Shown in pieces: positions 2,954 to 35,615 of a stretch of DNA of 64,000 nucleotides (position 1 is the stretch's first letter; each line of letters starts with the position of its first letter). The position numbers and the translations under genes were made by a program. Under the pieces are notes generated by a model. The model was given only the letters and a program-made list of their open reading frames with translations, was not told the DNA's origin and ran no database searches. The stretch lies in the sequence record MG592671.1; one strand, written 5' to 3'.

Positions 2954-2978
2954 CGCAACTAATGTTTTATATTATAAT
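2954..2978 (+). promoter_or_regulatory. phage-specific promoter motif
   Basis: CGCAACTAATGTTTTATATTATAAT, intergenic, one of about 30 forward copies. Confidence 0.7.
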
Positions 2979-3066
2979 GTAAGCAGATACACTACGCTTG
3001 CGAGCGAGCTGTAAGTAATACAGCCGTAAAAATGTGTTATTATAAAGCGTAGTAGGTTACGCTTAG

Positions 3067-3096
3067 GGCGCACTTGTTGCGCCTTTTTTTGTGACT
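3067..3096 (+). terminator. intrinsic terminator
   Basis: GGCGCA-CTTGT-TGCGCC + T7 + GTGACT. Confidence 0.7.
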
Positions 3097-3125
3097 GTAT
3101 AAAACATTAACTTAGGGTAAGAAAT

Positions 3126-3650
3126 ATGAAATATCGCCACACTGTGAACGTTAGCTGGTCTTCAACGCAAAATCGTGATGAGTTTAAAATCCAAGCAGTT
3201 AAGGATTGCATCCCGCATTTGATTGAGATGTTGTTCCTTTCAGATGAAGATGCTATTGGTCAGGATACTTCAACTATTATCCAGTTAGTTGATACTATTG
3301 AAACTTCAGCTGACCATTTAGGTCGTCCTGTGGGCATAACTGTAATTCCTGTTCAAATGGAAGTTAAAAAGACACGACAGCTTACTGTTAAGATACGCAT
3401 TGATCAGTCACTGCACCAAATGCTCCATACTCTTGCTCACGAAATGGAGCATGTGCGTCAGTCATACACTGCGGATTTAGTTATTGGCTTTATTACTCCT
3501 ACAGAGCATGTTAATATCTGGAATGGTAAGGCGTTTAGCACTAAGTTCTTTGATTACAGCGACTTTCCTTGGGAACGCCAAGCTGAAGAAGTCGCTCACG
3601 AGTTTATGGAAGATGTGCTAGAAGACGCGCTAAGTTTTAGCCCACTTTAA
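3126..3650 (+). CDS. zincin-like metallopeptidase domain protein
   Basis: HEMEH (HExxH) motif plus downstream PWE..AE motif. Confidence 0.65.
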   Translation: MKYRHTVNVSWSSTQNRDEFKIQAVKDCIPHLIEMLFLSDEDAIGQDTSTIIQLVDTIETSADHLGRPVGITVIPVQMEVKKTRQLTVKIRIDQSLHQMLHTLAHEMEHVRQSYTADLVIGFITPTEHVNIWNGKAFSTKFFDYSDFPWERQAEEVAHEFMEDVLEDALSFSPL

Positions 3651-3664
3651 TTTGGAGATTTAGC

Positions 3665-4012
3665 ATGTCAATTACTATCGAAGCAGTAAACTTTGTTGAA
3701 ACGTTTGTTAACGTGCTGCGCACAAAAGCAGTGCTGCACACGCCAGTGACAGGAACACTACACGGAAACTTCATTGCAGAGGTCTCCCTTCGTGATATGG
3801 GTGATGTTAGAATTGCAGTTGTGAACAGCCTTACTACTGACGATCGTCAAAAATACCGTATTATTATTGAATCAGCCCCTGTCGCCTTCGGAACTGATTC
3901 AATAGGTCATGTCTTTACTATACAACAAGGCGATACTGTCCTTGCTGATGATGATAGTGAGCATCAATGGGCTGAGCGTATCATGAAGTATATCTTACGG
4001 CATATGGAATAG
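3665..4012 (+). CDS. hypothetical protein
   Basis: 115 aa ORF, GGAG RBS. Confidence 0.65.
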   Translation: MSITIEAVNFVETFVNVLRTKAVLHTPVTGTLHGNFIAEVSLRDMGDVRIAVVNSLTTDDRQKYRIIIESAPVAFGTDSIGHVFTIQQGDTVLADDDSEHQWAERIMKYILRHME

Positions 4013-4116
4013 AAAGAGCGAACAGGTAGTTGCAAGATTACCGCAAAAAATTGTTATAACAATATGTAAGCAGTAGATACTGCTTACTTTGTCACATTAA
4101 ATTAAAAGAGGCTTTT

Positions 4117-4446
4117 ATGTCAGAAGATAAGAACATTGTTGTTGCTGAAGGTGATATCTACGCTGAAACGTTTGACGCAGCGTCAAATATCACATCAGTT
4201 GTTAACGTTCTAGGTCGTGATGGTTACTTCCCAACACTAGTTGATAGTTCAACATTTGTTGGTAATGTGATTGACGGTTGTGACAAAGACTTTAGTGATC
4301 GAAACATCATTGATGTAGCGTTTAGTATTGCACGTCTACCACATTACGTATCTCAGCTCCCTAAAACTGGACTGTATAAACATCCGTGTGGTGGTATTTT
4401 TGATCATCCTTACGAAGAAAAGCCAACAAAGAAAAAGAAGAAGTAA
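4117..4446 (+). CDS. hypothetical protein
   Basis: 109 aa ORF after a TGTTATAAC extended -10 and leader hairpin; Lys-rich tail. Confidence 0.65.
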   Translation: MSEDKNIVVAEGDIYAETFDAASNITSVVNVLGRDGYFPTLVDSSTFVGNVIDGCDKDFSDRNIIDVAFSIARLPHYVSQLPKTGLYKHPCGGIFDHPYEEKPTKKKKK

Positions 4447-4615
4447 TTAGCTTTAATGATGTAGCGGTACCAGCCGCTACATTTTGTTATAGCATGATAT
4501 GGTAAATGTTAAATCCCATAACTTATGTGTTATAACAAAATGTAAGTTAAAAACGCTTGCACATTAAGGTGCGCTATTGCACTTCAAAACCCAAATAGAC
4601 TAAAAGGTATAAACC

Positions 4616-5461
4616 ATGACTATTAAAAAAATTGCTGATTTGACTGCTGACGTACGTTCTGCTTTAGAACTTGATCTTACTAACGGCATGGATAAAGCTG
4701 CTGCTGCTGAAAAGCATGATGTTCTACCACGCGTTGTTGGTATGGTGCAAATGAAGATGAAAGCATCTTCAGCTGAGACAGCTTCAGAAGATGCTGCCGC
4801 TCCGGAAACTACTACCGCTGGCGGTGACAAACTAGCAAAACTTGCCGCTCTTAAAGAAGAAGTTGGTGAAGTTGACAGTGAAGAGAAACCTGCCAAAGAG
4901 CGCAAGAAGCGTGAAAAGAAAGTTGTTGATAAAACTATCCGTGAAGTGATCATTGCTAAGTCGGCAACATCTAAGATGGCGTTTCTAACAGCAAAAGCAA
5001 ACTACGGCGGTACATCTGAAGCGTTCCTAGTAGGTAAACTGAAGAAGAAAGCTACTGAACGCAAAGCATCTGATCTTGCTCAACAATTCGGTACACTATC
5101 GATGGCAGATGATTTAACGATCACTCGCACAGTTTACCCGATCGATGCTTACGAAGCAGCGCTAGTAACAACGTACCAAAAACTTGTTTCTGAAGGTTAC
5201 GAGATGGTAGGTCGTGCACCTAAAGGTGCAGTTGAAAAAGCACCACGTAAGCCACGCGCTAAGAAAGTTGAAGAACCAGAAAGCGCTGAAGAGATCCAAG
5301 CAAAGATCGATGCGTTGCTTGCGCTTAAGGCAGAGAAAGAAGTTGTACTGGTTGATGAAGAATCAACCACCCAACCATCGAATTACGCTCCTGTAGTTGC
5401 TCCTAGCAATACAGATAGTGATGTTAGCGAACCAGTCGAAGAAAACACTGATTCAGAATAA
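4616..5461 (+). CDS. HTH-containing Lys/Glu/Ala-rich protein, family member 1
   Basis: clear similarity to 30171, 33061 and 32111 ORFs (PRVVGMV.MK, KLAALKEEVGE, GY...G..PKG, AEEIQA.ID). Confidence 0.8.
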   Translation: MTIKKIADLTADVRSALELDLTNGMDKAAAAEKHDVLPRVVGMVQMKMKASSAETASEDAAAPETTTAGGDKLAKLAALKEEVGEVDSEEKPAKERKKREKKVVDKTIREVIIAKSATSKMAFLTAKANYGGTSEAFLVGKLKKKATERKASDLAQQFGTLSMADDLTITRTVYPIDAYEAALVTTYQKLVSEGYEMVGRAPKGAVEKAPRKPRAKKVEEPESAEEIQAKIDALLALKAEKEVVLVDEESTTQPSNYAPVVAPSNTDSDVSEPVEENTDSE

Positions 5462-5476
5462 CTGGTCTACTTACTG

Positions 5477-5511
5477 GCCCCTGCCTTGAAAATAGGGCAG
5501 GGGCTTTTTTT
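5477..5511 (+). terminator. intrinsic terminator
   Basis: GCCCCTGCC/GGCAGGGGC stem + T7. Confidence 0.8.
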
Positions 5512-5552
5512 ATGGCTTTTTGATATATAATGATCACTAAGGATATGTCACA

Positions 5553-6395
5553 ATGAATAAGTTAATAAAAGCTCAAAAACAAGCAGTTCACTTACATCAG
5601 CATTTGAAATCTATATTAAGGAATATCAAAACTCGAACAACGCATCTTAAAAATCACATAACAACACCAGCAGTGAAACGTACCTTAGAGATGAAAATCC
5701 AAAATGGGTACAAGCAACTTGATACTATCATTGCCGAGATGTCAAAGTTAGGGTGTTTGGTAAAAGTAGACCGAAAGAAATTAAAAGTCATTAACTATAA
5801 GGCGCCAAGTGCCACTAAGACTCCTAAGGAGGTAATAGCGATTGCTATTGCTAATGGAGTTAACAACAAAAAAGAGTTTAGCACTGTCAGACTTGCTGAA
5901 TTACGATTGGCACTAAACGGGGATATGACTAAACAAGCAATACGCTCAGAAATGTTTGCTTTTATGCCTAACGTTTGTGTTAAGTGCGGGAGTGGCGGGA
6001 ATGGCCAAATGATGACTGCTGATCACATCATACCTCAAAGTAAAAATAAATCTCTAATCTTTCAGGTGTTGAACTTACAGCCAATGTGCGAACCTTGTAA
6101 CCAAAGTAAGGCAGCATCAGAAGATGCAGACTACCGAACTCCCCAGATGAAGTTCGCCGCCCTACAACGCCTATTACATCGTACTGGCAACATTGTTCCA
6201 GAACATATGTGTGATCGTGATATTAACATCTGCACACTTCGCATTTTACAATACACACAAATAGATATAGCCAATAAAATAGGCGTTAGTCAAGGAACTG
6301 TTTCAAAGATTGTGAATACATTTATCCCATATCATAACGTACACATCACAGAGATACTTCGTGTTAAAAAGCAAATTAACAAAGAAAATATTTAA
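5553..6395 (+). CDS. HNH endonuclease with C-terminal HTH
   Basis: CVKC...DHIIP...NLQPMCEPCNQSK HNH signature; TQIDIANKIGVSQGTVSKI HTH. Confidence 0.8.
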   Translation: MNKLIKAQKQAVHLHQHLKSILRNIKTRTTHLKNHITTPAVKRTLEMKIQNGYKQLDTIIAEMSKLGCLVKVDRKKLKVINYKAPSATKTPKEVIAIAIANGVNNKKEFSTVRLAELRLALNGDMTKQAIRSEMFAFMPNVCVKCGSGGNGQMMTADHIIPQSKNKSLIFQVLNLQPMCEPCNQSKAASEDADYRTPQMKFAALQRLLHRTGNIVPEHMCDRDINICTLRILQYTQIDIANKIGVSQGTVSKIVNTFIPYHNVHITEILRVKKQINKENI

Positions 6396-6591
6396 TTCAC
6401 GATGTTACCACATACATTAACAGCTTTGTGCCGCGCTGTCTGCAGCGGTACAAAGTATTGTGCATAATGCTTTGCTTATAATAATTCCGTGCTTAAACAA
6501 ACGGCCCTGCAACGAAGTTGCGAATGTCTATTAACTATTTGTTATAATTAATTATAACATTAATAAACTATTAACCTTAACCATAAAGGAT

Positions 6592-7188
6592 ATGAGTATG
6601 AGCATTGATATTGCCCAGGACCACATCCTCTACCAAGTTCAACAAGCAGACATTGATCTAGCAACGAAACTGGCCGAGGAAAGCTATAATAAGTATTCTA
6701 AATTAGTAATTAAGAAGAAGAGCCCGTATCATCAAAACAACCCTAAATCACATCTTGTTGGTAAAATAGGGGAAGTTGCCGCAGGTAATGCATTTATGGA
6801 ATTGAAGCAGATGTTAGGTTGGACTTATACTATTGATCAAGTGTACTTAGATCCAGCTCGAGATTCGTCATGCGACATTGTCATCAACAACGTCCGAATT
6901 GAAATTAAAACGTGGCGCCCAAGTGATTGGAGCAAATATGGAGCGTGTGTTGCTGAACGACAGGCTGTGAAAATGGCCAAAAAAGCTGATGTCGTTGTGT
7001 ATGGAACATATAATAACTGCACAAATGAGTACGAACTAAAAGGTTGGAACTCAATGAAAGATATTATGAATGTCACTCCTCAACTCACTGGCCCTAGTGG
7101 AAAGCAAGTGTTAAACAGAGTTATGACTCATCGTTGCATTACGCAATTACCTCTTAGTCAAGTTGATCAAGAAACATCACTATCGTAA
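6592..7188 (+). CDS. putative PD-(D/E)xK nuclease-fold protein
   Basis: GKIGE...CDIVI....IEIKT pattern. Confidence 0.5.
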   Translation: MSMSIDIAQDHILYQVQQADIDLATKLAEESYNKYSKLVIKKKSPYHQNNPKSHLVGKIGEVAAGNAFMELKQMLGWTYTIDQVYLDPARDSSCDIVINNVRIEIKTWRPSDWSKYGACVAERQAVKMAKKADVVVYGTYNNCTNEYELKGWNSMKDIMNVTPQLTGPSGKQVLNRVMTHRCITQLPLSQVDQETSLS

Positions 7189-7242
7189 TCTTTTGCGTAG
7201 AGTAAAATATTATCACTAAATTTTATCCGGAGCTAACTAAAA

Positions 7243-7539
7243 ATGTTCAACACAGATCTAAATGAGACTGAAGTGTCTCCACGCGCACGTCAACTAGCAC
7301 AAGGCATTATCAATAACGCACTTCGAAATATTCAGGCTGGGAAAACAGCAAGCGAAGTTAGTGTTCTTGGTAATGCTCAGTTCCAGACGTGTACGAAACT
7401 TTGCAAGCTCGCTCGTGATAAAGAACAACTCTATGTTGCATTGAATAGTGAGGCGAAACAACTTTATTTGGATGGTGGGCTACACGACCATACGCATCTA
7501 CTTATTCGCTCTATTGGTCGCAACGAGTATTATAGTTAG
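7243..7539 (+). CDS. hypothetical protein
   Basis: 98 aa ORF, GGAG RBS. Confidence 0.6.
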   Translation: MFNTDLNETEVSPRARQLAQGIINNALRNIQAGKTASEVSVLGNAQFQTCTKLCKLARDKEQLYVALNSEAKQLYLDGGLHDHTHLLIRSIGRNEYYS

Positions 7540-7619
7540 GTAAATGAATATGCGGGTGTGCTATACACCCGCATAATTGTGTTATATTAAAATATACATT
7601 AACTTGGAAGAGCGCGATA

Positions 7620-7865
7620 ATGGAAAAGATTACTATTGACGGAACAATGAGCAACACTGATTATTCTGTCATTAAACAGTCTTTTGAAGCTGGTATGGAG
7701 AAGCACCATAATGCATTTCCAACAGCACCAATTCAAAAATTCGAACTTGATGATATTGTTCGGATTAGAATTTCGGTGACGGATTGCAGTAAGCAAAATG
7801 TTAAGTCGCTATATTTTTGTTTTTCCAATATTGGATTTGACCTTACTATTAGTAAAGAGGCCTAA
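7620..7865 (+). CDS. hypothetical protein
   Basis: 81 aa ORF with RBS. Confidence 0.55.
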   Translation: MEKITIDGTMSNTDYSVIKQSFEAGMEKHHNAFPTAPIQKFELDDIVRIRISVTDCSKQNVKSLYFCFSNIGFDLTISKEA

Positions 7866-7866
7866 C

Positions 7867-8370
7867 ATGAAAAAGATTATTCTTACCGTTCTTGCCATTC
7901 CTATTGCATCAGCATCAATTTATGCTGCACCAGAAGTTTTAATGATGGATGAAAATGCATTCACTGGCTCAACTATTGCAATGTACGACTTTGAGACTAA
8001 CGAGTGTAGCATTGTACACACTAATAATGATGGTGTGTTAAACTCTATCGTAAACGTTCGTGCAAACAAAGACATCAATATTGTCATTCCAGGAGATTTT
8101 TCTGGAACAACTCGTGTAGTATCCAAATACATACAAGAAGTTGATTATAGCTCATTTATTAGAGAAGCAAGTGACGAATATCTCACAATAAGTTATAATC
8201 ACAAAAACCCTACTCTGAACACAGAGTTTGTAATGAACTCCATGAACTCATTTGGATCATTTACTGTTTACCAGGATATGAAGGCAAAAGTTCACAAAGC
8301 TAAATTCAGCAGTGATGTTCGTGATGTATTTTATAACTGTGTATCCACTATCACTAAAAGCGAGTTGTGA
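7867..8370 (+). CDS. secreted hypothetical protein
   Basis: ATG 7867 (MKKIILTVLAIPIASASIYA signal peptide), AGAGG RBS. Confidence 0.65.
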   Translation: MKKIILTVLAIPIASASIYAAPEVLMMDENAFTGSTIAMYDFETNECSIVHTNNDGVLNSIVNVRANKDINIVIPGDFSGTTRVVSKYIQEVDYSSFIREASDEYLTISYNHKNPTLNTEFVMNSMNSFGSFTVYQDMKAKVHKAKFSSDVRDVFYNCVSTITKSEL

Positions 8371-8441
8371 TACGCTCAGTGCAACAAAGCCAAAAATATA
8401 TGTTATAAAATATTGTAACTTAATTATAAAAGGTATCTAAA

Positions 8442-9332: not shown

Positions 9333-9340
9333 GGACTCAG

Positions 9341-10023: not shown

Positions 10024-10035
10024 TCATTCATCTAG

Positions 10036-10777: not shown

Positions 10778-10800
10778 CACAACTAATGTGTTATATTAGT
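10778..10800 (+). promoter_or_regulatory. phage-specific promoter motif upstream of polX
   Basis: CACAACTAATGTGTTATATTAGT. Confidence 0.6.
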
Positions 10801-10833: not shown

Positions 10834-11598
10834 ATGACTAAAACAGTACATCCAATAAACATTAAAGTTGCAAACCATCTCCTATATGTATCCCAGTTAA
10901 TGAAACAGGCTGATGAAGTGCACTACAAAATTCAACCATTTATCCGCAATGCAAAGGCCGTAAAAGATTGTGAGTATGAGATGCATAAAGTATCTGATCA
11001 TTACTTACTAAGCTGGAAAGGTTTAGGAAAGGCAGTCTTGAGAGAGATTCGCGAGTTCTTAGATAACGGCTCTCAAACCACTAAAGTCCAAAAGTATTTT
11101 CACTTAAAGGACCCTTCATACAGACCTCACCAAGAAGCACATAATATTGCAACATCGCTCAAGGATATTTTAGTTGAGGATTTTGCAGGTCACTACTTAG
11201 TTGATATTTGTGGATCTATAAGACGCAATGCCCCATTTTGTCGAGATATAGATATTATAACTACTGCTCCGGCTGAGTTAATATACGATATATTCGAAGA
11301 TTGTGAATTTGCAGTTAAGTATGGCGGTGATAAACGAATTCGCTTTGAAGCATATGGATTTGGTGTAGATGTTCGATGTATTTGTCCAGAGAAATACCAG
11401 TTCATGCTTTTACACTATACTGGTTCTGCATCTCATAACATTTTTCTTAGAAAAGAAGCAATAAAAAAGGGATGGACGTTATCTGAAAATGGACTGTATC
11501 GAACAGTTGATAAAGAGGATGTGCTCCCATCACCAAACACAGAGAAGGCAATTTTTAATATGCTAGGCGTGGACTATGTCGCGCCTGAATTTAGATAG
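10834..11598 (+). CDS. polX: DNA polymerase X (beta family), no PHP domain
   Basis: GLGKA HhH, GSIRR...RDIDII (DxD), VDVR, LLHYTGS..HNI.LR..A...GW.LSENGLY, IF..LG.DYV.PE.R. Confidence 0.88.
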   Translation: MTKTVHPINIKVANHLLYVSQLMKQADEVHYKIQPFIRNAKAVKDCEYEMHKVSDHYLLSWKGLGKAVLREIREFLDNGSQTTKVQKYFHLKDPSYRPHQEAHNIATSLKDILVEDFAGHYLVDICGSIRRNAPFCRDIDIITTAPAELIYDIFEDCEFAVKYGGDKRIRFEAYGFGVDVRCICPEKYQFMLLHYTGSASHNIFLRKEAIKKGWTLSENGLYRTVDKEDVLPSPNTEKAIFNMLGVDYVAPEFR

Positions 11599-11609: not shown

Positions 11610-11634
11610 CGCAACTAATGTGTTATATGTTATT
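11610..11634 (+). promoter_or_regulatory. phage-specific promoter motif upstream of sigma factor 1
   Basis: CGCAACTAATGTGTTATATGTTATT. Confidence 0.6.
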
Positions 11635-11728: not shown

Positions 11729-12841
11729 ATGACAGACGTAAAATCTATATTCAAAGCTCTTGCAACAATGACAAACGAGGAACTAGTTAAAGTTGCTCAG
11801 GAGTCTAATATAGAGGCAGTTAAAAAGAAAGCAGTAGAACGCATTGTCATTAAGAACCGTGGTTTAGTCCGTCGTGTAGCACATGCTTATCCCATTTACA
11901 ACACTGAATTTGAGAACCGAGAGCAAGACGGGATGATCGGACTTTTAACAGCTATTAACAAATTTGATGATAATCAAAAAGTTCAGTTTTCAACGTATGC
12001 TTGGACTTGGATCAAGCAAGCAATCATAGAAGAAGGCAATGAGGCAGGAAATGTAATACGTGTTCCTAGACACGTTGCTGAAGCTAGGATGAAAGTGAAT
12101 AAAGTTCGAAATCGTTTCATGAAAGAGGAAGGTCGCTTCCCGTCAATTGAAGAGATGGTAAAACTGTGTAAAACTGTAAAGAAAGACCTAGTAGAATACA
12201 TTATTGCTGGACAAGGCACAGTTTCTGGATCAATTGATGCCCCTGTTAGTGCAGGTGATGAGGCGTTAAGTGCTCATGATATACACGGTGGGCCAGAGTT
12301 GATTGCTGGTATGGTAGGCGAGCATAACATGCAGCTTTTAGTAAAAGCAATTGCCACTATGCACCCTAATGAGCAATTCATGTTAAATGCTGTGTTTGGT
12401 CTAACAGAAGATCATGAAGCATATAATTTTAGTGAATTGGTAGGATGTGTTGAGCGAGCAGACGGAGCTACATTAAACAACGTTACTTCAGTTTCACGTC
12501 AATACCATGCCTTAGTTAAGGTGTTGATTGATCGTATTGATGATGAGCGTATTAAAGCTTATCATGCGCCTAAAAAGGTGGAGTTAACATTTGAGACTCT
12601 TCTAGCTAGAACAACCCCTTCTGTGTTGATGCGCGAGATTAACAAATTACACTACAACGAGCAATTTATCATCCAAGCCCATAATGGATTACTTGAAGAT
12701 GATGACGAGTCGTGGAGTCTTGAAGATATGGTGGGAAATGTTTTTGACTCACAAGAAACTCCTCTTGAAACTGTATCACAAGTTCGCGCTGAATACAAAT
12801 CTTTATTACGTTGGTTAGAACGTCAAATATTAGATCAATAA
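11729..12841 (+). CDS. phage RNA polymerase sigma-70 family factor (RpoD/RpoS-like region 2) with tandem duplicated region-4-like domain
   Basis: KNRGLVRRVAHAY..EQDGMIGLLTAINKFD....FSTYAWTWIKQAI..IRVP; region 3 SIDAPV; two HxNEQF...GL.ED repeats. Confidence 0.85.
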   Translation: MTDVKSIFKALATMTNEELVKVAQESNIEAVKKKAVERIVIKNRGLVRRVAHAYPIYNTEFENREQDGMIGLLTAINKFDDNQKVQFSTYAWTWIKQAIIEEGNEAGNVIRVPRHVAEARMKVNKVRNRFMKEEGRFPSIEEMVKLCKTVKKDLVEYIIAGQGTVSGSIDAPVSAGDEALSAHDIHGGPELIAGMVGEHNMQLLVKAIATMHPNEQFMLNAVFGLTEDHEAYNFSELVGCVERADGATLNNVTSVSRQYHALVKVLIDRIDDERIKAYHAPKKVELTFETLLARTTPSVLMREINKLHYNEQFIIQAHNGLLEDDDESWSLEDMVGNVFDSQETPLETVSQVRAEYKSLLRWLERQILDQ

Positions 12842-12865: not shown

Positions 12866-12908
12866 CGCAACTAATGTTTTATATTATAATGTAAGCGACG
12901 TCGCTTAC
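12866..12908 (+). promoter_or_regulatory. phage-specific promoter + 5' leader hairpin
   Basis: CGCAACTAATGTTTTATATTATAAT then TAAGCGACGTCGCTTA. Confidence 0.7.
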
Positions 12909-18375: not shown

Positions 18376-18400
18376 CACAACTATTGTTTTATAATATATT
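18376..18400 (+). promoter_or_regulatory. phage-specific promoter motif
   Basis: CACAACTATTGTTTTATAATATATT. Confidence 0.6.
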
Positions 18401-19020: not shown

Positions 19021-19111
19021 ACCAAACAACAAACAGAGTATGCAACGTATCACAAGTATTATGTTATAAATAAAAATGTAAACGTATATTTTATTTCCAC
19101 AAGGGGTATTC

Positions 19112-20527: not shown

Positions 20528-20552
20528 CGCAACTTTTGTTTTATACTATATT
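20528..20552 (+). promoter_or_regulatory. phage-specific promoter motif
   Basis: CGCAACTTTTGTTTTATACTATATT. Confidence 0.55.
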
Positions 20553-22645: not shown

Positions 22646-22670
22646 CGTAACTAATGTTTTATATTATAAT
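22646..22670 (+). promoter_or_regulatory. phage-specific promoter motif
   Basis: CGTAACTAATGTTTTATATTATAAT. Confidence 0.65.
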
Positions 22671-24000: not shown

Positions 24001-24025
24001 CGCAACTAATGTTTTATAATATACT
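24001..24025 (+). promoter_or_regulatory. phage-specific promoter motif
   Basis: CGCAACTAATGTTTTATAATATACT. Confidence 0.7.
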
Positions 24026-24869: not shown

Positions 24870-24912
24870 CATAACTAATGTGTTATAATAAAATATAAGC
24901 AATAATGCTTAT
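24870..24912 (+). promoter_or_regulatory. phage-specific promoter + leader hairpin
   Basis: CATAACTAATGTGTTATAATAAAAT then TAAGCAATAATGCTTA. Confidence 0.6.
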
Positions 24913-25497: not shown

Positions 25498-25522
25498 CGC
25501 AACTAATGTTTTATAATATATT
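25498..25522 (+). promoter_or_regulatory. phage-specific promoter motif
   Basis: CGCAACTAATGTTTTATAATATATT. Confidence 0.7.
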
Positions 25523-26162: not shown

Positions 26163-26213
26163 GCCCTTTTCGTGCGACTTGGAGTTAGCAAAACCCGCAA
26201 CTAATGTTTTATA
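26163..26213 (+). repeat. 51-bp terminator-tail/promoter direct repeat, copy 1
   Basis: GCCCTTTTCGTGCGACTTGGAGTTAGCAAAACCCGCAACTAATGTTTTATA, identical at 27115-27165. Confidence 0.9.
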
Positions 26214-27114: not shown

Positions 27115-27165
27115 GCCCTTTTCGTGCGACTTGGAGTTAGCAAAACCCGCAACTAATGTTTTATA
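27115..27165 (+). repeat. 51-bp terminator-tail/promoter direct repeat, copy 2
   Basis: identical to 26163-26213. Confidence 0.9.
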
Positions 27166-28274: not shown

Positions 28275-28344
28275 TAAACGGAGACCTGGCTATAGCGCCT
28301 AAATAAAATATTATATTAAAGAGCACAACAGGAGAGTACCCAAT

Positions 28345-28599: not shown

Positions 28600-28600
28600 A

Positions 28601-29200: not shown

Positions 29201-29520
29201 TAAGTGTCCTTTTGAATTGGAACTAAATTTTGGGATCCGCTATATAGAACCCTATTTAAAAACCTAAATCACACGCCGGCGGTTTATGAATTATACTACT
29301 AACCATACGTATTATATCCCATCTATAGTGGTAGGTCACCATCTACCTAGAATTTAACTCACCAGTCATTAAAAAAACGTGTCATCATACAGATATATGA
29401 CACACTACCACCCGCCGCGCTCGCACATGGCATATACTGTACCTGCATATGAGTACGAATGCACAGAGCGTACATGCCATATCCATACGTATCTACATAT
29501 TGCATACTCTATCCTATACC

Positions 29521-29561
29521 AAAACCTTACTTCGCTCCGGGGAAGAACTTCATTCCTTATA
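29521..29561 (+). repeat. 41-bp direct repeat copy 1
   Basis: AAAACCTTACTTCGCTCCGGGGAAGAACTTCATTCCTTATA, identical at 29778-29818. Confidence 0.9.
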
Positions 29562-29666
29562 CTATGAGAATCTCCGGACGGGCGGAACACTTCTTATCAC
29601 TTCTTACCAGTACATATAAAGGCTAATGGAACACAACCTTTTCCAATAGTATCTTCTTGTAAAGCA

Positions 29667-29746
29667 TTATATAAAACATTAGTTGCGGATTTAGTCACAG
29701 GAATTACTAGTAACCTAGGTTAATCCGCAACTAATGTTTTATATAA
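29667..29746. repeat. inverted pair of the promoter-like motif (25-bp arms)
   Basis: TTATATAAAACATTAGTTGCGGATT (29667-29691) / AATCCGCAACTAATGTTTTATATAA (29722-29746). Confidence 0.85.
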
Positions 29747-29777
29747 GCCTTTGCAGGGTTTTAAAGTAAACACCACT

Positions 29778-29818
29778 AAAACCTTACTTCGCTCCGGGGA
29801 AGAACTTCATTCCTTATA
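29778..29818 (+). repeat. 41-bp direct repeat copy 2
   Basis: identical to 29521-29561. Confidence 0.9.
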
Positions 29819-29930
29819 TAGCCAGTACTCTGGATATTACCATTCCACTATTCCACTTCCTGTAATCATACACTCATACTCATACACCTAAGTGTTCAGT
29901 TCCAATACATCTGATACGCGCGATTAAATT

Positions 29931-30137
29931 CGCAACTATTGTTTTATATGTGACTATAAAGCAAAGCGATACAACGTTTTAAATGCCACGTATTGTTTTA
30001 GGTTGCTAGATAAAACTCGCAACTTATGTTTTATACTATAGTAAGGGTTAGCTAGTTAGCTAATTCGCAAACTGCATGGTTGCTAGATAAAATCCGCAAC
30101 TATTGTTTTATATTAAAATGTAAGCAACGTCGCTTAC
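29931..30137 (+). promoter_or_regulatory. tandem promoter cluster (3 motifs) + leader hairpin
   Basis: CGCAACT motifs at 29931, 30018, 30095; TAAGCAACGTCGCTTA. Confidence 0.7.
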
Positions 30138-30170
30138 TAATTAACGCCCTAGAGGCAAAAGGAATACATT

Positions 30171-31022
30171 ATGACTACAATTACTAAAATGACTGCACTT
30201 ACTACTGAAGCTCGTTCTGCAATTGAAGTAGCTATTACTGCTGGCACAGACCGCAAAGAAATTGCTAAAGAGCACAACTGTACTCCACGAGTTGTTGGTA
30301 TGGTGGCAATGAAACTTAAAGCTCCTGCAGCTCAATCTCCAGTTGTTGAAGAAACAACTTCAGAAGAAAGCACAGAAGTTTTAGAACCGCTCAATCTGAA
30401 GGGTCGACCAGCCAATCAATCTAAACTAGAGAAACTTGCTGCTCTTAAAGAAGAAGTTGGTGAGATTGACGCAGTAGAAGCAACTACTTCTAAAGCTAAA
30501 GGCACTAGAAGTGTTCGTGGTCTAAACGACAAAGACACTCGTGACTTGATCGTTGTTAAGAACGATGGAAGCAAGATGGCGTGGTGTACTAGTAAGTTCA
30601 ACTACAAAAACTCAACAGATGCCTTCATTAAAGGTAAGTTAGAGAAACGCGCTTCAAATCGTAAAGGCGAGCTTGCAACGCAATTCACTAACTTACTAGC
30701 TGGTGAGTTGATCATTGAGCGCACTTCAATTGCATCCGCAGAAGCGGATGCACTCACTGTAGCAGCATACAATGAGCTTGTTGAAGCTGGTTACGAGTTT
30801 TGTGGTAAAGCTCCAAAAGGAGCTCCTAAGAAAGAAAAGCCAGTTGTTGAGAAAGCTCCACAAACTGCTGAAGAAATTCAAGCAGAAATTGATGCTCTGA
30901 TTGCCAAAAAGGCAGTCTTTGAAAAAGTTCCAGCTACTACTGAAGTAGCTACGGACGAAGAGCAAGCAACGGCAGCTACTGAAGAAGACCTTGATGAAGC
31001 ATTACTGGATGCTGAATCTTAA
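30171..31022 (+). CDS. HTH-containing Lys/Glu/Ala-rich protein, family member 2
   Basis: near-duplicate of 33061-33879; homolog of 4616-5461. Confidence 0.85.
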   Translation: MTTITKMTALTTEARSAIEVAITAGTDRKEIAKEHNCTPRVVGMVAMKLKAPAAQSPVVEETTSEESTEVLEPLNLKGRPANQSKLEKLAALKEEVGEIDAVEATTSKAKGTRSVRGLNDKDTRDLIVVKNDGSKMAWCTSKFNYKNSTDAFIKGKLEKRASNRKGELATQFTNLLAGELIIERTSIASAEADALTVAAYNELVEAGYEFCGKAPKGAPKKEKPVVEKAPQTAEEIQAEIDALIAKKAVFEKVPATTEVATDEEQATAATEEDLDEALLDAES

Positions 31023-31039
31023 TCATAACCCTTGACAAA

Positions 31040-31067
31040 GGAGGCTCCGGCCTCCTTTTTTATGACT
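31040..31067 (+). terminator. intrinsic terminator
   Basis: GGAGGC-TCCG-GCCTCC + T6 + ATGACT. Confidence 0.8.
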
Positions 31068-31081
31068 AGATGCTGATAAAA

Positions 31082-31180
31082 TGCAAAGCATTATATAAAA
31101 CATTAGTTGCGGATTTAGTCTTAGATGTAACTAATATGCATGATAAAATTCACAACTAATGTTTTATATAATGCTTTGCA
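31082..31180. repeat. 28-bp perfect inverted repeat of the promoter-like motif
   Basis: TGCAAAGCATTATATAAAACATTAGTTG (31082-31109) / CAACTAATGTTTTATATAATGCTTTGCA (31153-31180). Confidence 0.9.
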
Positions 31181-31814
31181 GGGTTTTTGAGCTTCGCTAG
31201 TATTGGTAATAGCATACCAATCATTTTGGTACAACGTCATCACTTAAAATAAATCTGCGTCATCATGCTACGTGACGAGCAATGTCACGCCTGTACATGA
31301 GCGCACATCACGCATGCGCCTGTGTGCCTGTACGTACATATGAGCGCACGTGTCACATGTACATGTATAAGAGTATAAGATTACAATAGTTTATCAACAG
31401 TCCTATATCATATGATAATGATTGGTGTTATAATAGGTATTACAAAGAAACTCGTCCCTACTTATATAAGGTAAAGTCAAAATCCTACCATGTTCCTATC
31501 ACCGACGTACCGGTTGACTATAGTCCCATGTCATATGACATCCTAATACAATATCCACCTAGTAGTACAAAACAATACCATTAATTAATAACATATCATC
31601 TATCAGTACTCAACATTTGAACATGGAGTTATTACTATCCATAGTCCAGACTATTCATGCCTCTATACCAGACATCATGACACTTGAACTGAGTTAAGAA
31701 TGCCATTACCATATATGGAATGGATAATGACAAGACACTGTACGGATATACATGCCTGTACAAATATACAGTGGTAGCCAGTTATAACTGTGTGAATATA
31801 CAGTGGTATAAATT

Positions 31815-32100
31815 CGCAACTAATGTTTTATATAAGTCTTTGCGCATGCGTCCAGTAATTGTGTACTAGTTGAGTAGTATGTCATAATTCACAACTATTG
31901 TTTTATACTATAGTAAGGGGTAGCTAGTTAGTTACCCAGTAAAACAATACGCAGTGATTAAATTCACAACTAATGTTTTATACTATAGTAAGGGGTTAGC
32001 TACTAACCCGCTACTTAGTTGCGCAGATTAAATTCGCAACTAATGTTTTATGATATAATATAAGCAATAACGCTTATAATTTAACAGCCCAAAGGGCTAC
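31815..32100 (+). promoter_or_regulatory. tandem promoter cluster (4 motifs) + two leader hairpins
   Basis: motifs at 31815, 31890, 31965, 32035; TAAGCAATAACGCTTA; AGCCCAAAGGGCT. Confidence 0.7.
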
Positions 32101-32110
32101 GGTAACTATT

Positions 32111-32638
32111 ATGAAAAACGCAACTAACAACACAGTAAAAACAATCCCAGCACACTACTGTGCGCTAGTAGCTCCTACAAAAGAGGTAGCTCCTACAAAA
32201 GTACACAAAACTGCTAAGGCAACCCGTGACCTTAAAAACAAAGCTGTTCGTGAGCTTTTAGTAGTAAAGAACAACGCTACTAAAACAGCGTGGGTAAGCT
32301 CAAAATATGCTTACAAAAATGCTTCTTTAGACTTGATTGTTGCAAAAATCCAAAAGCGTGCTAACAATCGCTGTGAAGCAGTAGCTAACACTTATTCATT
32401 AATTTTGCAAGGTGCTATTGTGCTAGAACGCGCTGAAATTTTAAGTGCTGATTCTACTGCATTAACTCTTGACAAATGGAACGAGTTAGTAGCTGAAGGT
32501 TACACAGTTGCAGGTCGACCTCCTAAAGGTTGTACTGCAAAAAATGTAGAAGTCAAGGAAGAAGAACCCTTGACAGAGGAACAAATTGATGCAAAGATCA
32601 GTGCGTTAATTGCACGCCGTGAACTGCTTGTCAAGTAG
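32111..32638 (+). CDS. family member 3 lacking the N-terminal HTH
   Basis: RELLVVKNNATKTAWVSSKY.YKN...GYTVAGRPPKG..EEQIDAKI matches the C-terminal domain of 30171/33061. Confidence 0.8.
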   Translation: MKNATNNTVKTIPAHYCALVAPTKEVAPTKVHKTAKATRDLKNKAVRELLVVKNNATKTAWVSSKYAYKNASLDLIVAKIQKRANNRCEAVANTYSLILQGAIVLERAEILSADSTALTLDKWNELVAEGYTVAGRPPKGCTAKNVEVKEEEPLTEEQIDAKISALIARRELLVK

Positions 32639-32705
32639 TTTGTGGTAAAATAGTAGCTGGTCACCCAGCTACTATACTATAGAGCATTAGTCAAGTGATT
32701 AAATT

Positions 32706-33050
32706 CACAACTAATGTTTTATAGTATAGTATGAGTTAGCAACAACAGGAGTTCGTAAAATGTTGACAATGCTAACTCTTATGACGTGTTAACGTATGTG
32801 ATTAGTCGCAGCAAGCGCGGCTAAATTCACAACTATTGTTTTATACTATAGTAAGGGGTTAGTTACTAGCTAGCCACTTTACTATAAAACATTAGGATGC
32901 ATGATTAAAAACGCAACTAATGTTTTATAGTAAGGTAAGGGAGCAACGCTGCTCCACATTACATAAGTTGCACAGATTAAATTCGCAACTAATGTTTTAT
33001 ATTAAAATATAAGCAATAACGCTTATAACATTAACAGCCCAAAGGGCTAA
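32706..33050 (+). promoter_or_regulatory. tandem promoter cluster (4 motifs) + leader hairpins
   Basis: motifs at 32706, 32828, 32912, 32984; leader nearly identical to 32018-32100. Confidence 0.7.
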
Positions 33051-33060
33051 GGTATACAAA

Positions 33061-33879
33061 ATGACTACAATTACTAAAATGACTGCACTTACTACTGAAG
33101 CTCGTTCTGCAATTGAAGTAGCTATCCAAGCTGGCACTGATCGTAAAGAGATCGCGGCTGCAAACAATTGTACCCCACGCGTTGTTGGTATGGTAGCAAT
33201 GAAGCTAAAGGCTTCTACAGAAGTGAAAGAAGAGCCTCAAGATGCGGCAGTAGAAGACGCAACTGAAACTACGCCAGTTCAACAATCTAAACTAGAGAAG
33301 CTTGCTGCTCTTAAAGAAGAAGTTGGTGAGATTGACGCAGTAGAAGCAACGGGCGCAACGGGCGAGAAGAGCACGCGCTCAGTTCGTGGTCTAAACGACA
33401 AAGACACTCGTGACTTGATCGTTGTTAAAAATGAAGCTACTAAACTAGCATGGGTAACTTCAAAATTCAACTACAAAAACTCAACAGATGCCTTCATTAA
33501 AGGTAAGCTTGAGAAACGCGCTGGTAACCGTAAAGGTGAACTAGGTCAACAGTTCTCTAAGCTACTTGATGGTGAAATGATCGTTGAACGCACCCAGATC
33601 GCTTCAAGCGATGCAGATGCATTGACAGTAACAGCATACAACACTCTAGTTGAAGCTGGTTACGAATTCTGCGGACGAGCACCGAAAGGCGCTCCTAAAA
33701 AGGAGAAACCAGCAGTAGAGAAGGCTCCACAAACTGCTGAAGAGATCCAAGCAGAGATTGACGCTTTGATTGCTAAGAAAGAGGGTTTTGAGAAAGTTCA
33801 AGCTCCAGCAGCTACTGAGGAGCAGGAAACTGCTACTGATGAAGCTCAAGAATCTCAAGAAGCTCAAGAAGAAGCTTAA
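33061..33879 (+). CDS. HTH-containing Lys/Glu/Ala-rich protein, family member 4
   Basis: first ~65 nt identical to the 30171 gene; long shared internal blocks. Confidence 0.85.
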   Translation: MTTITKMTALTTEARSAIEVAIQAGTDRKEIAAANNCTPRVVGMVAMKLKASTEVKEEPQDAAVEDATETTPVQQSKLEKLAALKEEVGEIDAVEATGATGEKSTRSVRGLNDKDTRDLIVVKNEATKLAWVTSKFNYKNSTDAFIKGKLEKRAGNRKGELGQQFSKLLDGEMIVERTQIASSDADALTVTAYNTLVEAGYEFCGRAPKGAPKKEKPAVEKAPQTAEEIQAEIDALIAKKEGFEKVQAPAATEEQETATDEAQESQEAQEEA

Positions 33880-33896
33880 TCATAATACTTGACAAA

Positions 33897-33926
33897 AGAG
33901 GACTTCGGTCCTCTTTTTTTGTGACT
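33897..33926 (+). terminator. intrinsic terminator (UUCG loop)
   Basis: AGAGGAC-TTCG-GTCCTCT + T-tract + GTGACT. Confidence 0.85.
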
Positions 33927-33948
33927 GAATGGATTAGTCTGCAACCTG

Positions 33949-34020
33949 TTATATAAAACATTAGTTGCGATTTTTGGAATAGAATCCAGTGGTGAAATTC
34001 ACAACTATTGTTTTATATAA
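33949..34020. repeat. third inverted pair of the promoter-like motif
   Basis: TTATATAAAACATTAGTTG / CAACTATTGTTTTATATAA (one mismatch). Confidence 0.75.
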
Positions 34021-34188
34021 GTCTTTGCGGAGTGGTTGTGGTAACCCATTAATTGAACTAAAAATAAAACCCATCCTGTGTGATGTCAAGCTAAAATCAC
34101 ATTAACTTGCAAGTTCAATACCGCAACTAATGTTTTATATTTGAGTATAAGCAATAACGCTTATGGTAACCAAAATGGACAAATTAAC

Positions 34189-34461
34189 ATGATTGTAATT
34201 ACAACAACATTTGATTATAACTGCATTGAACTTATTGCAGCACGCAAAGCAACTGACGCTGATAAAGCGCGTGACACATATGCATATAACAATATGTTAG
34301 CAACTGAGACTGATGAATTCACAGTTGAAGTACTTGTTGAGGATTGCGAGCAGTTTATCACTAATATGAAAAGTGATGCGCAAAACACAGCCAACGCACT
34401 TGACATTAATGTTGGCGATGTACTTGCTAACTGGGAAGAATTTATTTGTGAGCACATTTAG
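34189..34461 (+). CDS. small acidic hypothetical protein
   Basis: ATG 34189 after promoter motif at 34122 and leader hairpin. Confidence 0.6.
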   Translation: MIVITTTFDYNCIELIAARKATDADKARDTYAYNNMLATETDEFTVEVLVEDCEQFITNMKSDAQNTANALDINVGDVLANWEEFICEHI

Positions 34462-34541
34462 TACACGTGTTCAAAAACGCAACTAATGTTTTATACTATA
34501 ATATGGGAACAATGTTGTTCCCACTCACTAGGAGATACAAC

Positions 34542-34760
34542 ATGAACATTAAAAAATATCGCAACGCTATTCTTGCTGTGGCACATGAGTACTACAGCGA
34601 AGCAACATTGGATAAAGCGGGCAACCACTTTAAGCTTGACATGGGCGACTTTACATTGTCTGTATCAGCAACACCTAAAGTTCCAGCAATGGTACTTAAA
34701 GAAGTAAGGAGAGATATTAAGCGTTATATTTCTGGGCACTATACAATACAACAACGCTAA
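34542..34760 (+). CDS. small hypothetical protein
   Basis: ATG 34542, AGGAG RBS, promoter 34478, hairpin GGGAAC/GTTCCC. Confidence 0.6.
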   Translation: MNIKKYRNAILAVAHEYYSEATLDKAGNHFKLDMGDFTLSVSATPKVPAMVLKEVRRDIKRYISGHYTIQQR

Positions 34761-34925
34761 GGAGTAAAGATGTATCTTGAGATACGAATGTGCTTACTAT
34801 TATTAGTTGGTATATGTATCTTGTGTTTTACGTAGTTTATCCTAGATATTAAACTCGCAACTAATGTTTTATAATATAGTATCGGGAAGCTTATGCTTCC
34901 CGACTATTTTACCAGGAGATACAAA

Positions 34926-35534
34926 ATGAAAATTAAAACAACAGTAAAACTTATCGCAATAGCATTAGTTGCTGGTTCAACCTTAGCAGCTACTCAATCT
35001 CACGCATTCAGTGCATCAAGTGTTGAAGGCAATAGTAAAGTTAAAATTGTACGTAAGATTGATCGTAAGTGTGCTAGTCTTACTGGACAAGACAGAGAGA
35101 TATTCAAAAAGCTAAGTCCATCTCGTATGTCTGTTGTGTACTCTATATACAATGGCCCTAAAGGTACAGAGGACAAGATAGAGGCATGCAATCTCTTAGC
35201 TGGTGATAACGAGCACTTAGTTATTACAAAGGCTGAGCGACAAGAGACAGAGCGACAAGCCGAGGAAGCGCGTATCCTTAAGGAGCGTGAGATGGCGCGC
35301 GCAGCACAAGAGGAACGCCAAGCAGCATGGGATGCTCTATCAAGTGAAGAAAAGAATAAGCATAGATTAGAGCGTAAAGAACGAATGTGTGCTCGAGCTA
35401 CTACTGACGCTGACCGCCAGTATGATTTATACCTCATGTCTAAAGACTATTACGGCGAGTCTCATGAAGCAACAATTGAGCAGGGATACTTAGTGCAACA
35501 ATTATTCACTCAGCGACGTCAAGCTTGCAAGTAA
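34926..35534 (+). CDS. secreted coiled-coil hypothetical protein
   Basis: signal peptide MKIKTTVKLIAIALVAGSTLAATQSHA, AGGAG RBS, promoter 34856. Confidence 0.7.
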   Translation: MKIKTTVKLIAIALVAGSTLAATQSHAFSASSVEGNSKVKIVRKIDRKCASLTGQDREIFKKLSPSRMSVVYSIYNGPKGTEDKIEACNLLAGDNEHLVITKAERQETERQAEEARILKEREMARAAQEERQAAWDALSSEEKNKHRLERKERMCARATTDADRQYDLYLMSKDYYGESHEATIEQGYLVQQLFTQRRQACK

Positions 35535-35615
35535 TTCAAAACTCGCAACTAATGTTTTATAATATAATGTAGGACAATAGGGTCCTACAATAATTAACAC
35601 AATAAGGTACACAAT

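What the first reader, a model, noticed from the sequence alone, without database searches (positions are those of the whole stretch)
2954..35570. Phage-specific promoter motif C(G/A)CAACTA(A/T)TGTTTTATA-N-TA.A.T, about 30 copies, ending abruptly at 35.6 kb
Seen: intergenic forward copies at 2954, 10778, 11610, 12866, 18376, 20528, 22646, 24001, 24870, 25498, 26196, 27148, then 18 more between 29726 and 35544; I saw none in the remaining 28 kb. The element has a -10-like TATAAT/TATACT but no TTGACA, and CGCAAC lies at about -31, the position of the MotA box in T4 middle promoters (established). A second class, plain TGnTATAAT, serves other genes. Inference: a dedicated regulon read by a phage sigma factor or activator.
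Basis: partly seen in the sequence, partly recalled or inferred. Interest (0 to 1): 0.65.

Follow-up and report, generated by a model that had tools for sequence, protein, structure and literature searches.

The report
Phage-specific promoter family, one gene block
A giant marine Vibrio phage puts one almost invariant 18-letter signal in front of the genes of a single 43-kb block of small, mostly unknown genes; it is a special class of promoter whose extra letters probably let a phage-made factor, perhaps the unusual sigma factor encoded in the same block, switch that block on as a unit.

Summary
The window is Vibrio phage 2.275.O (MG592671.1, 349 kb). CRCAACTAWTGTTTTATA occurs 36 times here (0.63 expected). 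In the whole genome there are 35 copies with up to 2 mismatches, all within record 54.8-97.6 kb. All 30 listed copies are real.

The -10 hexamer is TATAwT inside the 18-mer (positions 15-20) and the start is the purine at position 26. The evidence is that a genome-wide class, TGTTATAAT (61 forward copies), has the same core, TATAAT-AwAnT-R-TAAG, and that leader hairpins begin at positions 26-29. CGCAAC then lies in the spacer (-26 to -21), not at the MotA-box position. AsiA and MotA homologues are absent.

Who reads the invariant spacer block is unresolved. My best guess (0.4) is gp118, a sigma gene inside the block with two tandem region-4 domains. Rivals are host sigma-70 alone on PeSL-like early cassettes (0.3) and a separate regulator (0.2). 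RNA libraries contain the genes behind the tandem promoter arrays but not the ORF-free spacers.

This is a new variant of a known kind. The scan had already noted the sigma (s1-413592) and the promoter island (s1-416923) on this same DNA.

The parts
2954..2971 (+). class-1 promoter (18-mer), before gp103
   Evidence: 0 mismatches; flanks
4517..4534 (+). degenerate class-1/class-2 hybrid (G13), before gp106
   Evidence: 3 mismatches
10778..10795 (+). hybrid promoter (G13 gives TGnTATAnT), before gp117 (Pol X-like)
11610..11627 (+). hybrid promoter (G13) before sigma gene gp118
11729..12841 (+). gp118, sigma factor with regions 2 and 3 and two tandem region-4-like domains; candidate reader of the motif
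12866..12883 (+). class-1 promoter before gp119
18376..18393 (+). class-1 promoter before gp127
19051..19068 (+). degenerate copy before gp128
   Evidence: 3 mismatches
20528..20545 (+). class-1 promoter before gp131
22646..22663 (+). class-1 promoter before gp137
24001..24018 (+). class-1 promoter before gp139
24870..24887 (+). hybrid promoter (contains TGTTATAAT) before gp141
25498..25515 (+). class-1 promoter before gp142 (SprT-like)
26196..26213 (+). class-1 promoter before gp143
27148..27165 (+). class-1 promoter before gp145
29670..29687 (-). minus-strand copy, divergent partner of 29726 (subtype TATATAAKBCTTTGC)
29726..29743 (+). class-1 subtype B promoter, no ORF downstream
29931..30112 (+). 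tandem array of three promoters (29931, 30018, 30095) before gp149
31094..31111 (-). minus-strand copy reading into the gp149 terminator
31151..31168 (+). subtype B promoter followed by a terminator-like hairpin and a 600-bp ORF-free block
   Evidence: no RNA contigs at 31276-31866
31815..32052 (+). tandem array of four promoters (31815, 31890, 31965, 32035) before gp150; annotated in GenBank as a CRISPR spacer region
32706..33001 (+). tandem array of four promoters (32706, 32828, 32912, 32984) before gp151
   Evidence: an RNA contig starts at 32731, which is position 26 of the first copy
33952..33969 (-). minus-strand copy reading into the gp151 terminator
34000..34017 (+). subtype B promoter
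34122..34139 (+). class-1 promoter before gp152
34478..34495 (+). class-1 promoter before gp153
34856..34873 (+). class-1 promoter before gp154
35544..35561 (+). last class-1 promoter, before gp155
35856..35892 (+). strong intrinsic terminator (13-bp stem plus T run) that closes the regulon
36617..36634 (+). degenerate relic or weak copy before gp157
   Evidence: 3 mismatches

Best explanation
The 18-mer is the upstream two thirds of a phage-specific promoter class (class 1). RNA polymerase core with a sigma-70-family sigma binds the -10 hexamer TATAwT at motif positions 15-20. It starts at the purine at position 26, which is preceded by an almost invariant T at position 25. The transcript begins RUAAG and, in about half the copies, folds at once into a 5'-terminal stem-loop that probably protects the mRNA.

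This core is the same as in the genome-wide class-2 promoters (TGT-TATAAT-AwAnT-R-TAAG). Class 1 is set apart by the invariant spacer block yCGCAACTAATGTTT (-27 to -13) plus AAA at -31 to -29. This block replaces the canonical extended -10 TG.

Inferred: the block is a specificity signal read by a phage protein. The best candidate is gp118, a sigma encoded inside the regulon. It keeps sigma-70-like -10 and TG-reading residues but carries two tandem region-4 helix-turn-helix domains. These could contact two successive major grooves, at about -33 and about -24. gp118 and four other genes have hybrid promoters in which G13 creates TGnTATAnT. That would let host polymerase prime expression of the sigma, which then turns on the pure class-1 promoters, including the 3-4-fold tandem arrays before gp149, gp150 and gp151.

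Shown: the motif, its distribution, the shared core, the leader hairpins and the domain layout of the sigma.
For: Distribution and orientation:
- There are 35 copies, all within 12% of the genome, 32 of them co-oriented with the genes. Most lie in intergenic DNA, typically tens to about 150 nt before a start codon.
- 32 of 35 copies have unrelated flanks, and conservation has sharp edges.

Shared core:
- After the hexamer, both class 1 and class 2 show A, w, A, n, T (34/35 and 44/61), R (28/35 and 55/61), T, R, A, G.
- The G13 variants give a canonical TGnTATAnT in that register.

Start site:
- 13 of 35 leaders have a hairpin with dG <= -9, against 4.75% of random 40-mers. Their stems begin at positions 26-29 and covary in sequence.
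- One RNA-library contig begins exactly at position 26 of promoter 32706.

Expression:
- RNA libraries hold gp149, gp150, gp151 and gp154, but not the unique ORF-free blocks.

The spacer block is part of the promoter:
- The 11-mer CRCAACTAWTG occurs 32 times, 31 of them inside full promoters.
- There is no -35 consensus and no TG at -15/-14 in pure copies.

Candidate reader:
- No T7-like RNA polymerase match.
- gp118 aligns to RpoD/SigA through regions 2-3 into 4.1 and keeps the H455/E458 equivalents.
- It has an internal repeat, 33% identical, E = 3e-12.
- Both modules are nearest to Sigma70_r4 clusters, by features 0.93 and 0.90 and by TM-score 0.75 and 0.74.
- The layout is conserved in a 52%-identical relative.
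- Precedent: sigma gp36 of phiEco32, which lacks region 4, reads the single element tAATGTAtA with starts 6-8 bp downstream (PMC8948821).
Against: - No experiment links gp118 to the motif.
- gp118 itself sits behind a class-1-type promoter.
- Small takeover-type genes are normally the earliest genes and are read by unmodified host polymerase. In a relative (L017) the region around the sigma homologue uses host-type UP/-35/-10 promoters. In phage CBB the sigma lies in a block with RpoD-like promoters (PMC5259590). This fits gp118 being an early product that reads a later class, for example class 2.
- Class 2 shares weak spacer features with class 1 (C-26, C-24, TAA at -20 to -18), so one holoenzyme may read both.
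- Contigs cannot prove a 5' end.
- gp152 and gp153, which are behind single class-1 promoters, gave no contigs in three libraries.
- The model of gp118 is only moderately confident (mean pLDDT 66.6; 50-66 over the second region-4 module).
Confidence: 0.4

Rival explanations
1. These are immediate-early promoters read by unmodified host sigma-70 holoenzyme. The block is the phage's host-takeover or hyperplastic region. The near-identity of the copies reflects selection for strength plus concerted evolution of promoter cassettes, as for the PeSL elements of T4-like phages. gp118 is then an early product that reads another class.
For: - Gene content: dozens of small ORFans, tandem promoter arrays and ORF-free stretches, as in takeover modules.
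- PeSLs are highly conserved promoter cassettes concentrated in hyperplastic regions of T4-like phages (PMC4122927).
- The core -10, the discriminator and the Y-1/R+1 start are ordinary sigma-70 features shared with class 2.
- A weak GTTAAA/GATTAA lies 17 bp upstream of the hexamer, in the same register as the GTTACA of some class-2 promoters.
- Relatives use host-type promoters around the sigma homologue.
- The replication genes and the gp55-like sigma carry class-2 promoters, which is a middle-like position.
Against: - Sigma-70 is not known to read the spacer at -27 to -18, yet 14 spacer positions are invariant in copies with unrelated flanks.
- Pure copies lack both a good -35 and the TG at -15/-14, and keep T13 although G13 would strengthen a host promoter.
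- Only 4 of 35 copies have the upstream stem-loop that defines PeSLs.
Confidence: 0.3
2. The core is read by host sigma-70 or by the RpoD-like gp368. The spacer block is the binding site of a separate phage DNA-binding regulator: either an activator in the manner of MotA, or a repressor that shuts the block off at the switch to later transcription.
For: - The position between -35 and -10 is a classical operator position.
- The block is asymmetric, which fits a monomeric binder.
- The regulon ends sharply.
- Most proteins of the block are unknown, so a regulator could be among them.
Against: - No AsiA or MotA homologue.
- The block never occurs apart from the promoter core.
- No candidate DNA-binding protein was identified among the ten block proteins scanned.
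Confidence: 0.2
3. One reading: the -10 is TA.A.T at positions 20-25, the start is about position 32, and CGCAAC at about -31 acts like a MotA box.
For: A21 and T25 are the best-conserved flanking positions and mimic A-11 and T-7.
Against: - The same positions are conserved after the canonical TGTTATAAT of class 2, where they cannot be the -10.
- A start at 32 would cut the conserved leader hairpins in half.
- Subtype B copies have no usable hexamer at 20-25.
- There are no MotA or AsiA genes.
Confidence: 0.08
4. They are not promoters. They are a CRISPR-like array, as annotated in GenBank, or a recombination or packaging repeat.
For: GenBank annotates 31922-31974 as a CRISPR spacer. The copies lie at 70-87 bp spacing in the arrays.
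Against: - The copies are dispersed over 43 kb in front of genes and in gene orientation.
- They carry a -10 hexamer and a start-site motif shared with 61 other promoters.
- The so-called repeats are promoters and the so-called spacers are leader hairpins.
Confidence: 0.02

Closest known systems
PeSL / PmSL cassettes (promoter-early or promoter-middle stem-loop) of T4-like phages (Arbiol 2010; Comeau 2014, PMC4122927)
   Same: Highly conserved promoter-plus-hairpin cassettes repeated many times within one phage genome. They are concentrated in a hyperplastic block of small ORFans, and degraded copies are also present.
   Different: PeSL promoters have a recognisable -35, and their stem-loop lies upstream as the terminator of the preceding gene. 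Here the invariant part is the spacer, there is no good -35, and the hairpin is in the transcribed leader. Only 4 of 35 copies have an upstream terminator. Cassette-mediated shuffling was not tested.
T4 middle promoters (MotA box at -30 plus -10, read by AsiA-remodelled sigma-70)
   Same: A -10 element plus a phage-specific upstream box in place of the -35, defining a temporal regulon.
   Different: The box lies at -26 to -21 and is contiguous with the -10 region. The sequence is unrelated to TGCTTtA. No MotA or AsiA homologue is present.
Promoters of phage-encoded sigma factors, for example phiEco32 gp36 (tAATGTAtA single element; PMC8948821), SPO1 gp28, and the predicted middle promoters of Rak2-like jumbo phages (CBB, GAP32; PMC5259590)
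   Same: Host core polymerase retargeted by a phage sigma to a phage-only consensus. The regulon includes or adjoins the sigma gene. The class-1 motif even contains TAATGT...ATA.
   Different: gp118 is only 25-27% identical to the Rak2-group sigmas and has two region-4 domains instead of none or one. The element is about twice as long as any of these. The motif was not found as a multi-copy family in any other sequence searched.
Extended -10 (TGnTATAAT) promoters
   Same: The phage's class 2 is a textbook case. Class 1 shares its hexamer, discriminator and start.
   Different: Pure class-1 copies have TG two bases too far upstream (-17/-16). Only the five G13 hybrids meet the definition.

Membership tests
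Sigma-70-type -35/-10 promoter | -10 hexamer TAnnnT about 7 nt before a purine start | tested here: met
   TATAwT at positions 15-20, T25/R26 as Y-1/R+1. The start itself is not mapped.
Sigma-70-type -35/-10 promoter | -35 hexamer resembling TTGACA, 16-18 bp upstream | tested here: not met
   The consensus there is G-a-t-t-A-A. Consensus scan gave 23 sites against 27.9 expected.
Extended -10 promoter | TG at -15/-14, one base before the hexamer | tested here: not met
   TG is at -17/-16 in 29 of 34 copies. Only the G13 hybrids (4517, 10778, 11610, 24870, record 54854) qualify.
T4 middle (MotA/AsiA) promoter | MotA box (a/t)(a/t)(a/t)TGCTTtA centred at -30 | tested here: not met
   The sequence is unrelated, and the block is centred at about -23 in the register shared with class 2.
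T4 middle (MotA/AsiA) promoter | Phage encodes MotA and AsiA | tested here: not met
   PF09114 gave no match. PF09010 gave 12.8 bits inside a 510-aa frame. T4 as control scored 207 and 144 bits.
PeSL cassette | Conserved early promoter repeated between ORFans of a hyperplastic region | tested here: met
PeSL cassette | Terminator-like stem-loop immediately upstream of the promoter | tested here: not met
   4 of 35 copies.
PeSL cassette | Indels and gene swaps between close relatives bounded by the cassettes | not testable with these tools
   No close relative genome was found.
Single-subunit (T7/N4-type) phage RNA polymerase promoter | Phage encodes such a polymerase | tested here: inconclusive
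   PF00940 gave no match, but its control rang nowhere. The 3771-aa gp424 shows only a weak CBM hit. No RNA polymerase is annotated.
Regulon of a phage-encoded sigma factor | Phage encodes a sigma-70-family protein able to bind core and read a -10 | tested here: met
   gp118 has Sigma70_r2 at 2.6e-12 and aligns to RpoD regions 2-4.1. gp368 has regions 1.2-4. gp430 is gp55-like.
Regulon of a phage-encoded sigma factor | That sigma is necessary and sufficient with core for initiation at the motif | not testable with these tools
   Needs in vitro transcription or genetics.
CRISPR array (GenBank annotation) | Identical repeats separating unique spacers, with a leader, and no promoter features in the repeats | tested here: not met
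   The repeats are the promoters found 35 times genome-wide in front of genes.

The most novel reading that the evidence does not exclude
gp118 is a sigma factor with two region-4 domains that reads a three-part promoter. One helix-turn-helix sits on the -35-like GwTwAA/AAA, the second on the spacer box CGCAAC about one helical turn downstream, and region 2 sits on TATAwT. That would be base-specific reading of the promoter spacer by an extra sigma domain. It would explain why 25-30 consecutive positions are conserved, and it would give the phage a private promoter code that host sigma-70 cannot use.
Probability: 0.3. Interest if true: 0.75.

Novelty: new variant of a known kind. Interest (0 to 1): 0.5.

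Why it matters
Jumbo phages without their own RNA polymerase are thought to run their programme by swapping sigma factors on the host enzyme. Yet almost none of their promoter classes have been tied to a reader.

This phage offers an unusually clean system:
- Three sharply distinct promoter classes: the 18-mer, TGTTATAAT and ATAAATA.
- Three phage sigmas.
- One class confined to one 43-kb block.

If the tandem-region-4 sigma reads the invariant spacer, that is a new way of recognising a promoter and a ready-made orthogonal sigma/promoter pair. If host polymerase reads it alone, the element is an extreme case of concerted evolution of promoter cassettes, and it corrects a CRISPR mis-annotation in the public record.

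Tried and rejected
- Relatives with the same motif. The 18-mer gives only single, chance-level hits in IMG/VR (7 contigs with 1 match each). A looser core pattern gives one unrelated contig. Megablast finds only the phage itself.
- Homologues of gp118. IMG/VR and metagenomes give only 25-31% matches, confined to regions 2-3. Those loci were not used further. Two of them come from gut-metagenome assemblies and look microbial, not human.
- Co-variation of sigma and promoter. Only two informative relatives exist (L016, L017), so no test is possible.
- tRNA or known RNA families in the promoter island. ARAGORN finds none. The only Rfam hits are sub-threshold microRNA models on the inverted promoter pair, which are an artefact.
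- Function of the proteins behind the arrays (gp149-155, gp119, gp127). No Pfam or PHROG family was found.
- The C-terminal half of gp118 against PDB sequences: nothing. Foldseek of the whole model returns only sigma factors.
- Start sites from public RNA runs. Only assembled contigs were available and only one read-laying run was allowed, so 5' ends, strand and timing could not be read.
- Papers on this phage's transcription: none found.
- Other readings of the block. I compared it from memory with host sigma-54, sigma-32, sigma-28, sigma-E, IHF, CRP and Fis consensus sequences and saw no convincing match. This was not a computed test.

Full report
**Identity of the DNA.** The window is 100% identical to Vibrio phage 2.275.O._10N.286.54.E11 (MG592671.1). 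This is a 348,911-bp phage of Vibrio cyclitrophicus from the Nahant collection. Window position plus 62,000 gives the record position. I fetched the whole record in pieces and joined it for scripts. No paper in the library treats its transcription.

**The observation.** CRCAACTAWTGTTTTATA has 36 matches with up to 3 mismatches in the window, against 0.63 expected.
Each forms a divergent pair with a forward copy.
- Genome-wide there are 35 copies with up to 2 mismatches, all between record 54,854 and 97,561. That is 12% of the genome, and only two copies lie upstream of the window.
- The block ends with promoter 35544, gene gp155 and a 13-bp-stem terminator at 35856-35892.
- Conservation reaches beyond the 18-mer: AAA at -5 to -3, A21, T25 (33/34), T27, R28 and G30.
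- Thirty-two of the 35 copies have unrelated flanks. The identity is therefore maintained on the element itself and is not left over from recent duplication.

**Why it is a promoter, and where its parts are.** A second element, TGTTATAAT, occurs 61 times on the forward strand and 10 times on the reverse strand over the whole genome. Most copies are intergenic.
- After its hexamer come A, A/T, A, n, T, R, T, A, A, G. Exactly the same string follows TATAwT at positions 15-20 of the 18-mer.
- Five copies of the 18-mer carry G at position 13, which makes a canonical TGnTATAnT in that register.
- The two classes therefore share one core: the -10 at 15-20, an almost invariant pyrimidine at 25, a purine at 26 as the likely start, then UAAG.
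- Thirteen of 35 leaders form a hairpin with dG <= -9, against 4.75% of random 40-mers. The stems differ in sequence but begin at positions 26-29. This fits 5'-terminal stabilising stem-loops (an inference from established knowledge of RNase E). It does not fit a start at about 32.
- The consensus 17 bp upstream of the hexamer is GatTAA, not TTGACA. Sigma-70-type matches are not enriched.

**Expression.** Five small RNA-seq libraries from 2019 hold this DNA. Laid on 29700-35600, their contigs match with no other letters listed.
- They cover gp149, gp150, gp151 and gp154-155.
- They leave the unique ORF-free stretches 29700-30093, 31276-31866 and 34034-34624 empty in all four runs. That pattern argues for RNA rather than contaminating DNA.
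- The genes behind the three- and four-fold promoter arrays have the deepest contigs.
- One contig begins at 32731, which is position 26 of promoter 32706.
- Contigs cannot prove ends, strand or timing, so this is weak support only.

**Who could read it.**
- No T7-like polymerase was found, though that search had no working positive control. None is annotated, and the 3771-aa gp424 shows only a weak carbohydrate-binding hit.
- The phage belongs to the jumbo group that lacks its own RNA polymerase but encodes sigma factors (PMC7824862).
- It has three sigmas. gp118 (window 11729-12841) lies inside the regulon behind a G13 hybrid copy. gp368 has regions 1.2, 2, 3 and 4 and lies behind a TGTTATAAT promoter. 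gp430 matches T4 gp55 at E = 4e-8 and is also behind TGTTATAAT.
- A third motif, (T)ATAAATA, is the most enriched word before the remaining genes. It matches the T4-type late promoter reported for relatives (PMC5259590).
- AsiA and MotA profiles find T4's genes but nothing here.

**gp118.**
- It aligns with primary sigmas from region 2 into region 4.1 and keeps the histidine and glutamate that read the extended -10 TG.
- Its last 170 residues are an internal repeat, 33% identical, E = 3e-12.
- Both halves are nearest to Sigma70_r4 clusters, by language-model features (0.93 and 0.90) and by predicted structure (TM 0.75 and 0.74).
- A 52%-identical metagenomic relative keeps both halves.
- The AlphaFold model is moderately confident (pLDDT 66.6) and helical throughout.
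- The scan had noted this architecture before (s1-413592). I confirm it.

**Relatives.**
- The contig of the 52% relative (L016) has promoters cTGTACTAAAC-TGT-TATAGT-ATAGTGTAAG. The core is the same and ACTAA sits in the same register as in the 18-mer, but TG is in the canonical place.
- A more distant relative (L017) surrounds its sigma homologue with AAAAAGCTTGY-N17-TATAAT promoters, which look host-type.
- Nothing else in IMG/VR, the metagenomes or GenBank phages is close. Co-variation between sigma and motif therefore cannot be tested.

**Weighing the explanations.** That the element is a promoter class marking one regulon is close to certain (about 0.95). That the -10 and start lie as described here I put at about 0.8.
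- For a phage factor:
  - Sigma-70 is not known to read -27 to -18.
  - Pure copies lack both a -35 and a correctly placed TG.
  - The 11-mer never occurs apart from the core (31 of 32 occurrences).
  - A sigma with an extra DNA-binding module is encoded in the block behind a hybrid promoter that host enzyme could use.
- For host sigma-70 alone:
  - Blocks of small ORFans with clustered promoters are normally the first genes expressed.
  - Relatives use host-type promoters there.
  - Replication genes and the late sigma sit behind class 2, as middle genes would.
  - T4-like phages are known to keep highly uniform promoter cassettes (PeSLs; PMC4122927).
- Class 2 also shares faint spacer features with class 1, so a single holoenzyme might read both.
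- My figures are gp118 0.4, host alone 0.3, another regulator 0.2.

**Comparison and novelty.** The element works like the promoter of a phage-sigma or MotA-type regulon and looks like a PeSL/PmSL cassette. It fails defining features of each: no MotA or AsiA, no upstream stem-loop (4 of 35), no -35 and no canonical TG. It is a new variant of a known kind. What stands out is the invariant spacer combined with a tandem-region-4 sigma in the same block. The GenBank feature 'CRISPR spacer' at 31922-31974 is an artefact of the tandem promoters.

Noticed in passing
window 11729-12841: gp118 is a sigma-70-family protein with regions 2 and 3 followed by two tandem, mutually 33%-identical region-4-like domains. 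The layout is conserved in one metagenomic relative (P0002, 52% identical).
   Followed up: yes
window 31922-31974: GenBank annotates a 'CRISPR spacer' here. It is the leader between two of four tandem class-1 promoters, so the annotation is an artefact.
   Followed up: yes
window 30171-31022, 32111-32638, 33061-33879: gp149, gp150 and gp151 are paralogues with no Pfam or PHROG family. Each sits behind 3-4 tandem promoters and before a strong terminator. They have the deepest contigs in four RNA libraries.
   Followed up: partly
window 29670-29743, 31094-31168, 33952-34017: There are three divergent promoter pairs of a subtype (18-mer followed by TAAKBCTTTGC). The minus-strand member reads straight into the terminator of the preceding gene, and the plus-strand member has no ORF. 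They may give short antisense or non-coding RNAs, and might prime an origin.
   Followed up: no
window 31220-31810: A 600-bp ORF-free block with short direct repeats (for example ATATACAGTGGTA twice) and CG-rich runs. No RNA contigs lie on it. It is a candidate origin or packaging site.
   Followed up: no
whole record MG592671.1 (L001-L008): There are two further promoter classes. TGTTATAAT followed by AAAnTrTAAG has 61 forward copies, lying before replication genes, tRNA blocks, gp368 and the gp55-like gp430. (T)ATAAATA is enriched before the remaining genes, as the T4-type late promoter.
   Followed up: partly
L007:49187-50000 with L008:1-89 (record 299187-300089): The hypothetical protein NVP2275O_430 matches T4 late sigma gp55 (E = 4e-8) and is unannotated as such.
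   Followed up: partly
window 10834-11598: gp117, annotated as hypothetical, has DNA polymerase beta (Pol X) palm and thumb domains (thumb E = 4.8e-18).
   Followed up: no
L017:8500-15320: A distant relative carries its own repeated promoter, AAAAAGCTTGY-N17-TATAAT, around its sigma homologue. This shows that each lineage has a private, highly uniform promoter cassette.
   Followed up: partly
window 31055: One RNA-library contig has an extra T in the T run of the gp149 terminator. This may be a strain difference, slippage or an assembly error.
   Followed up: no
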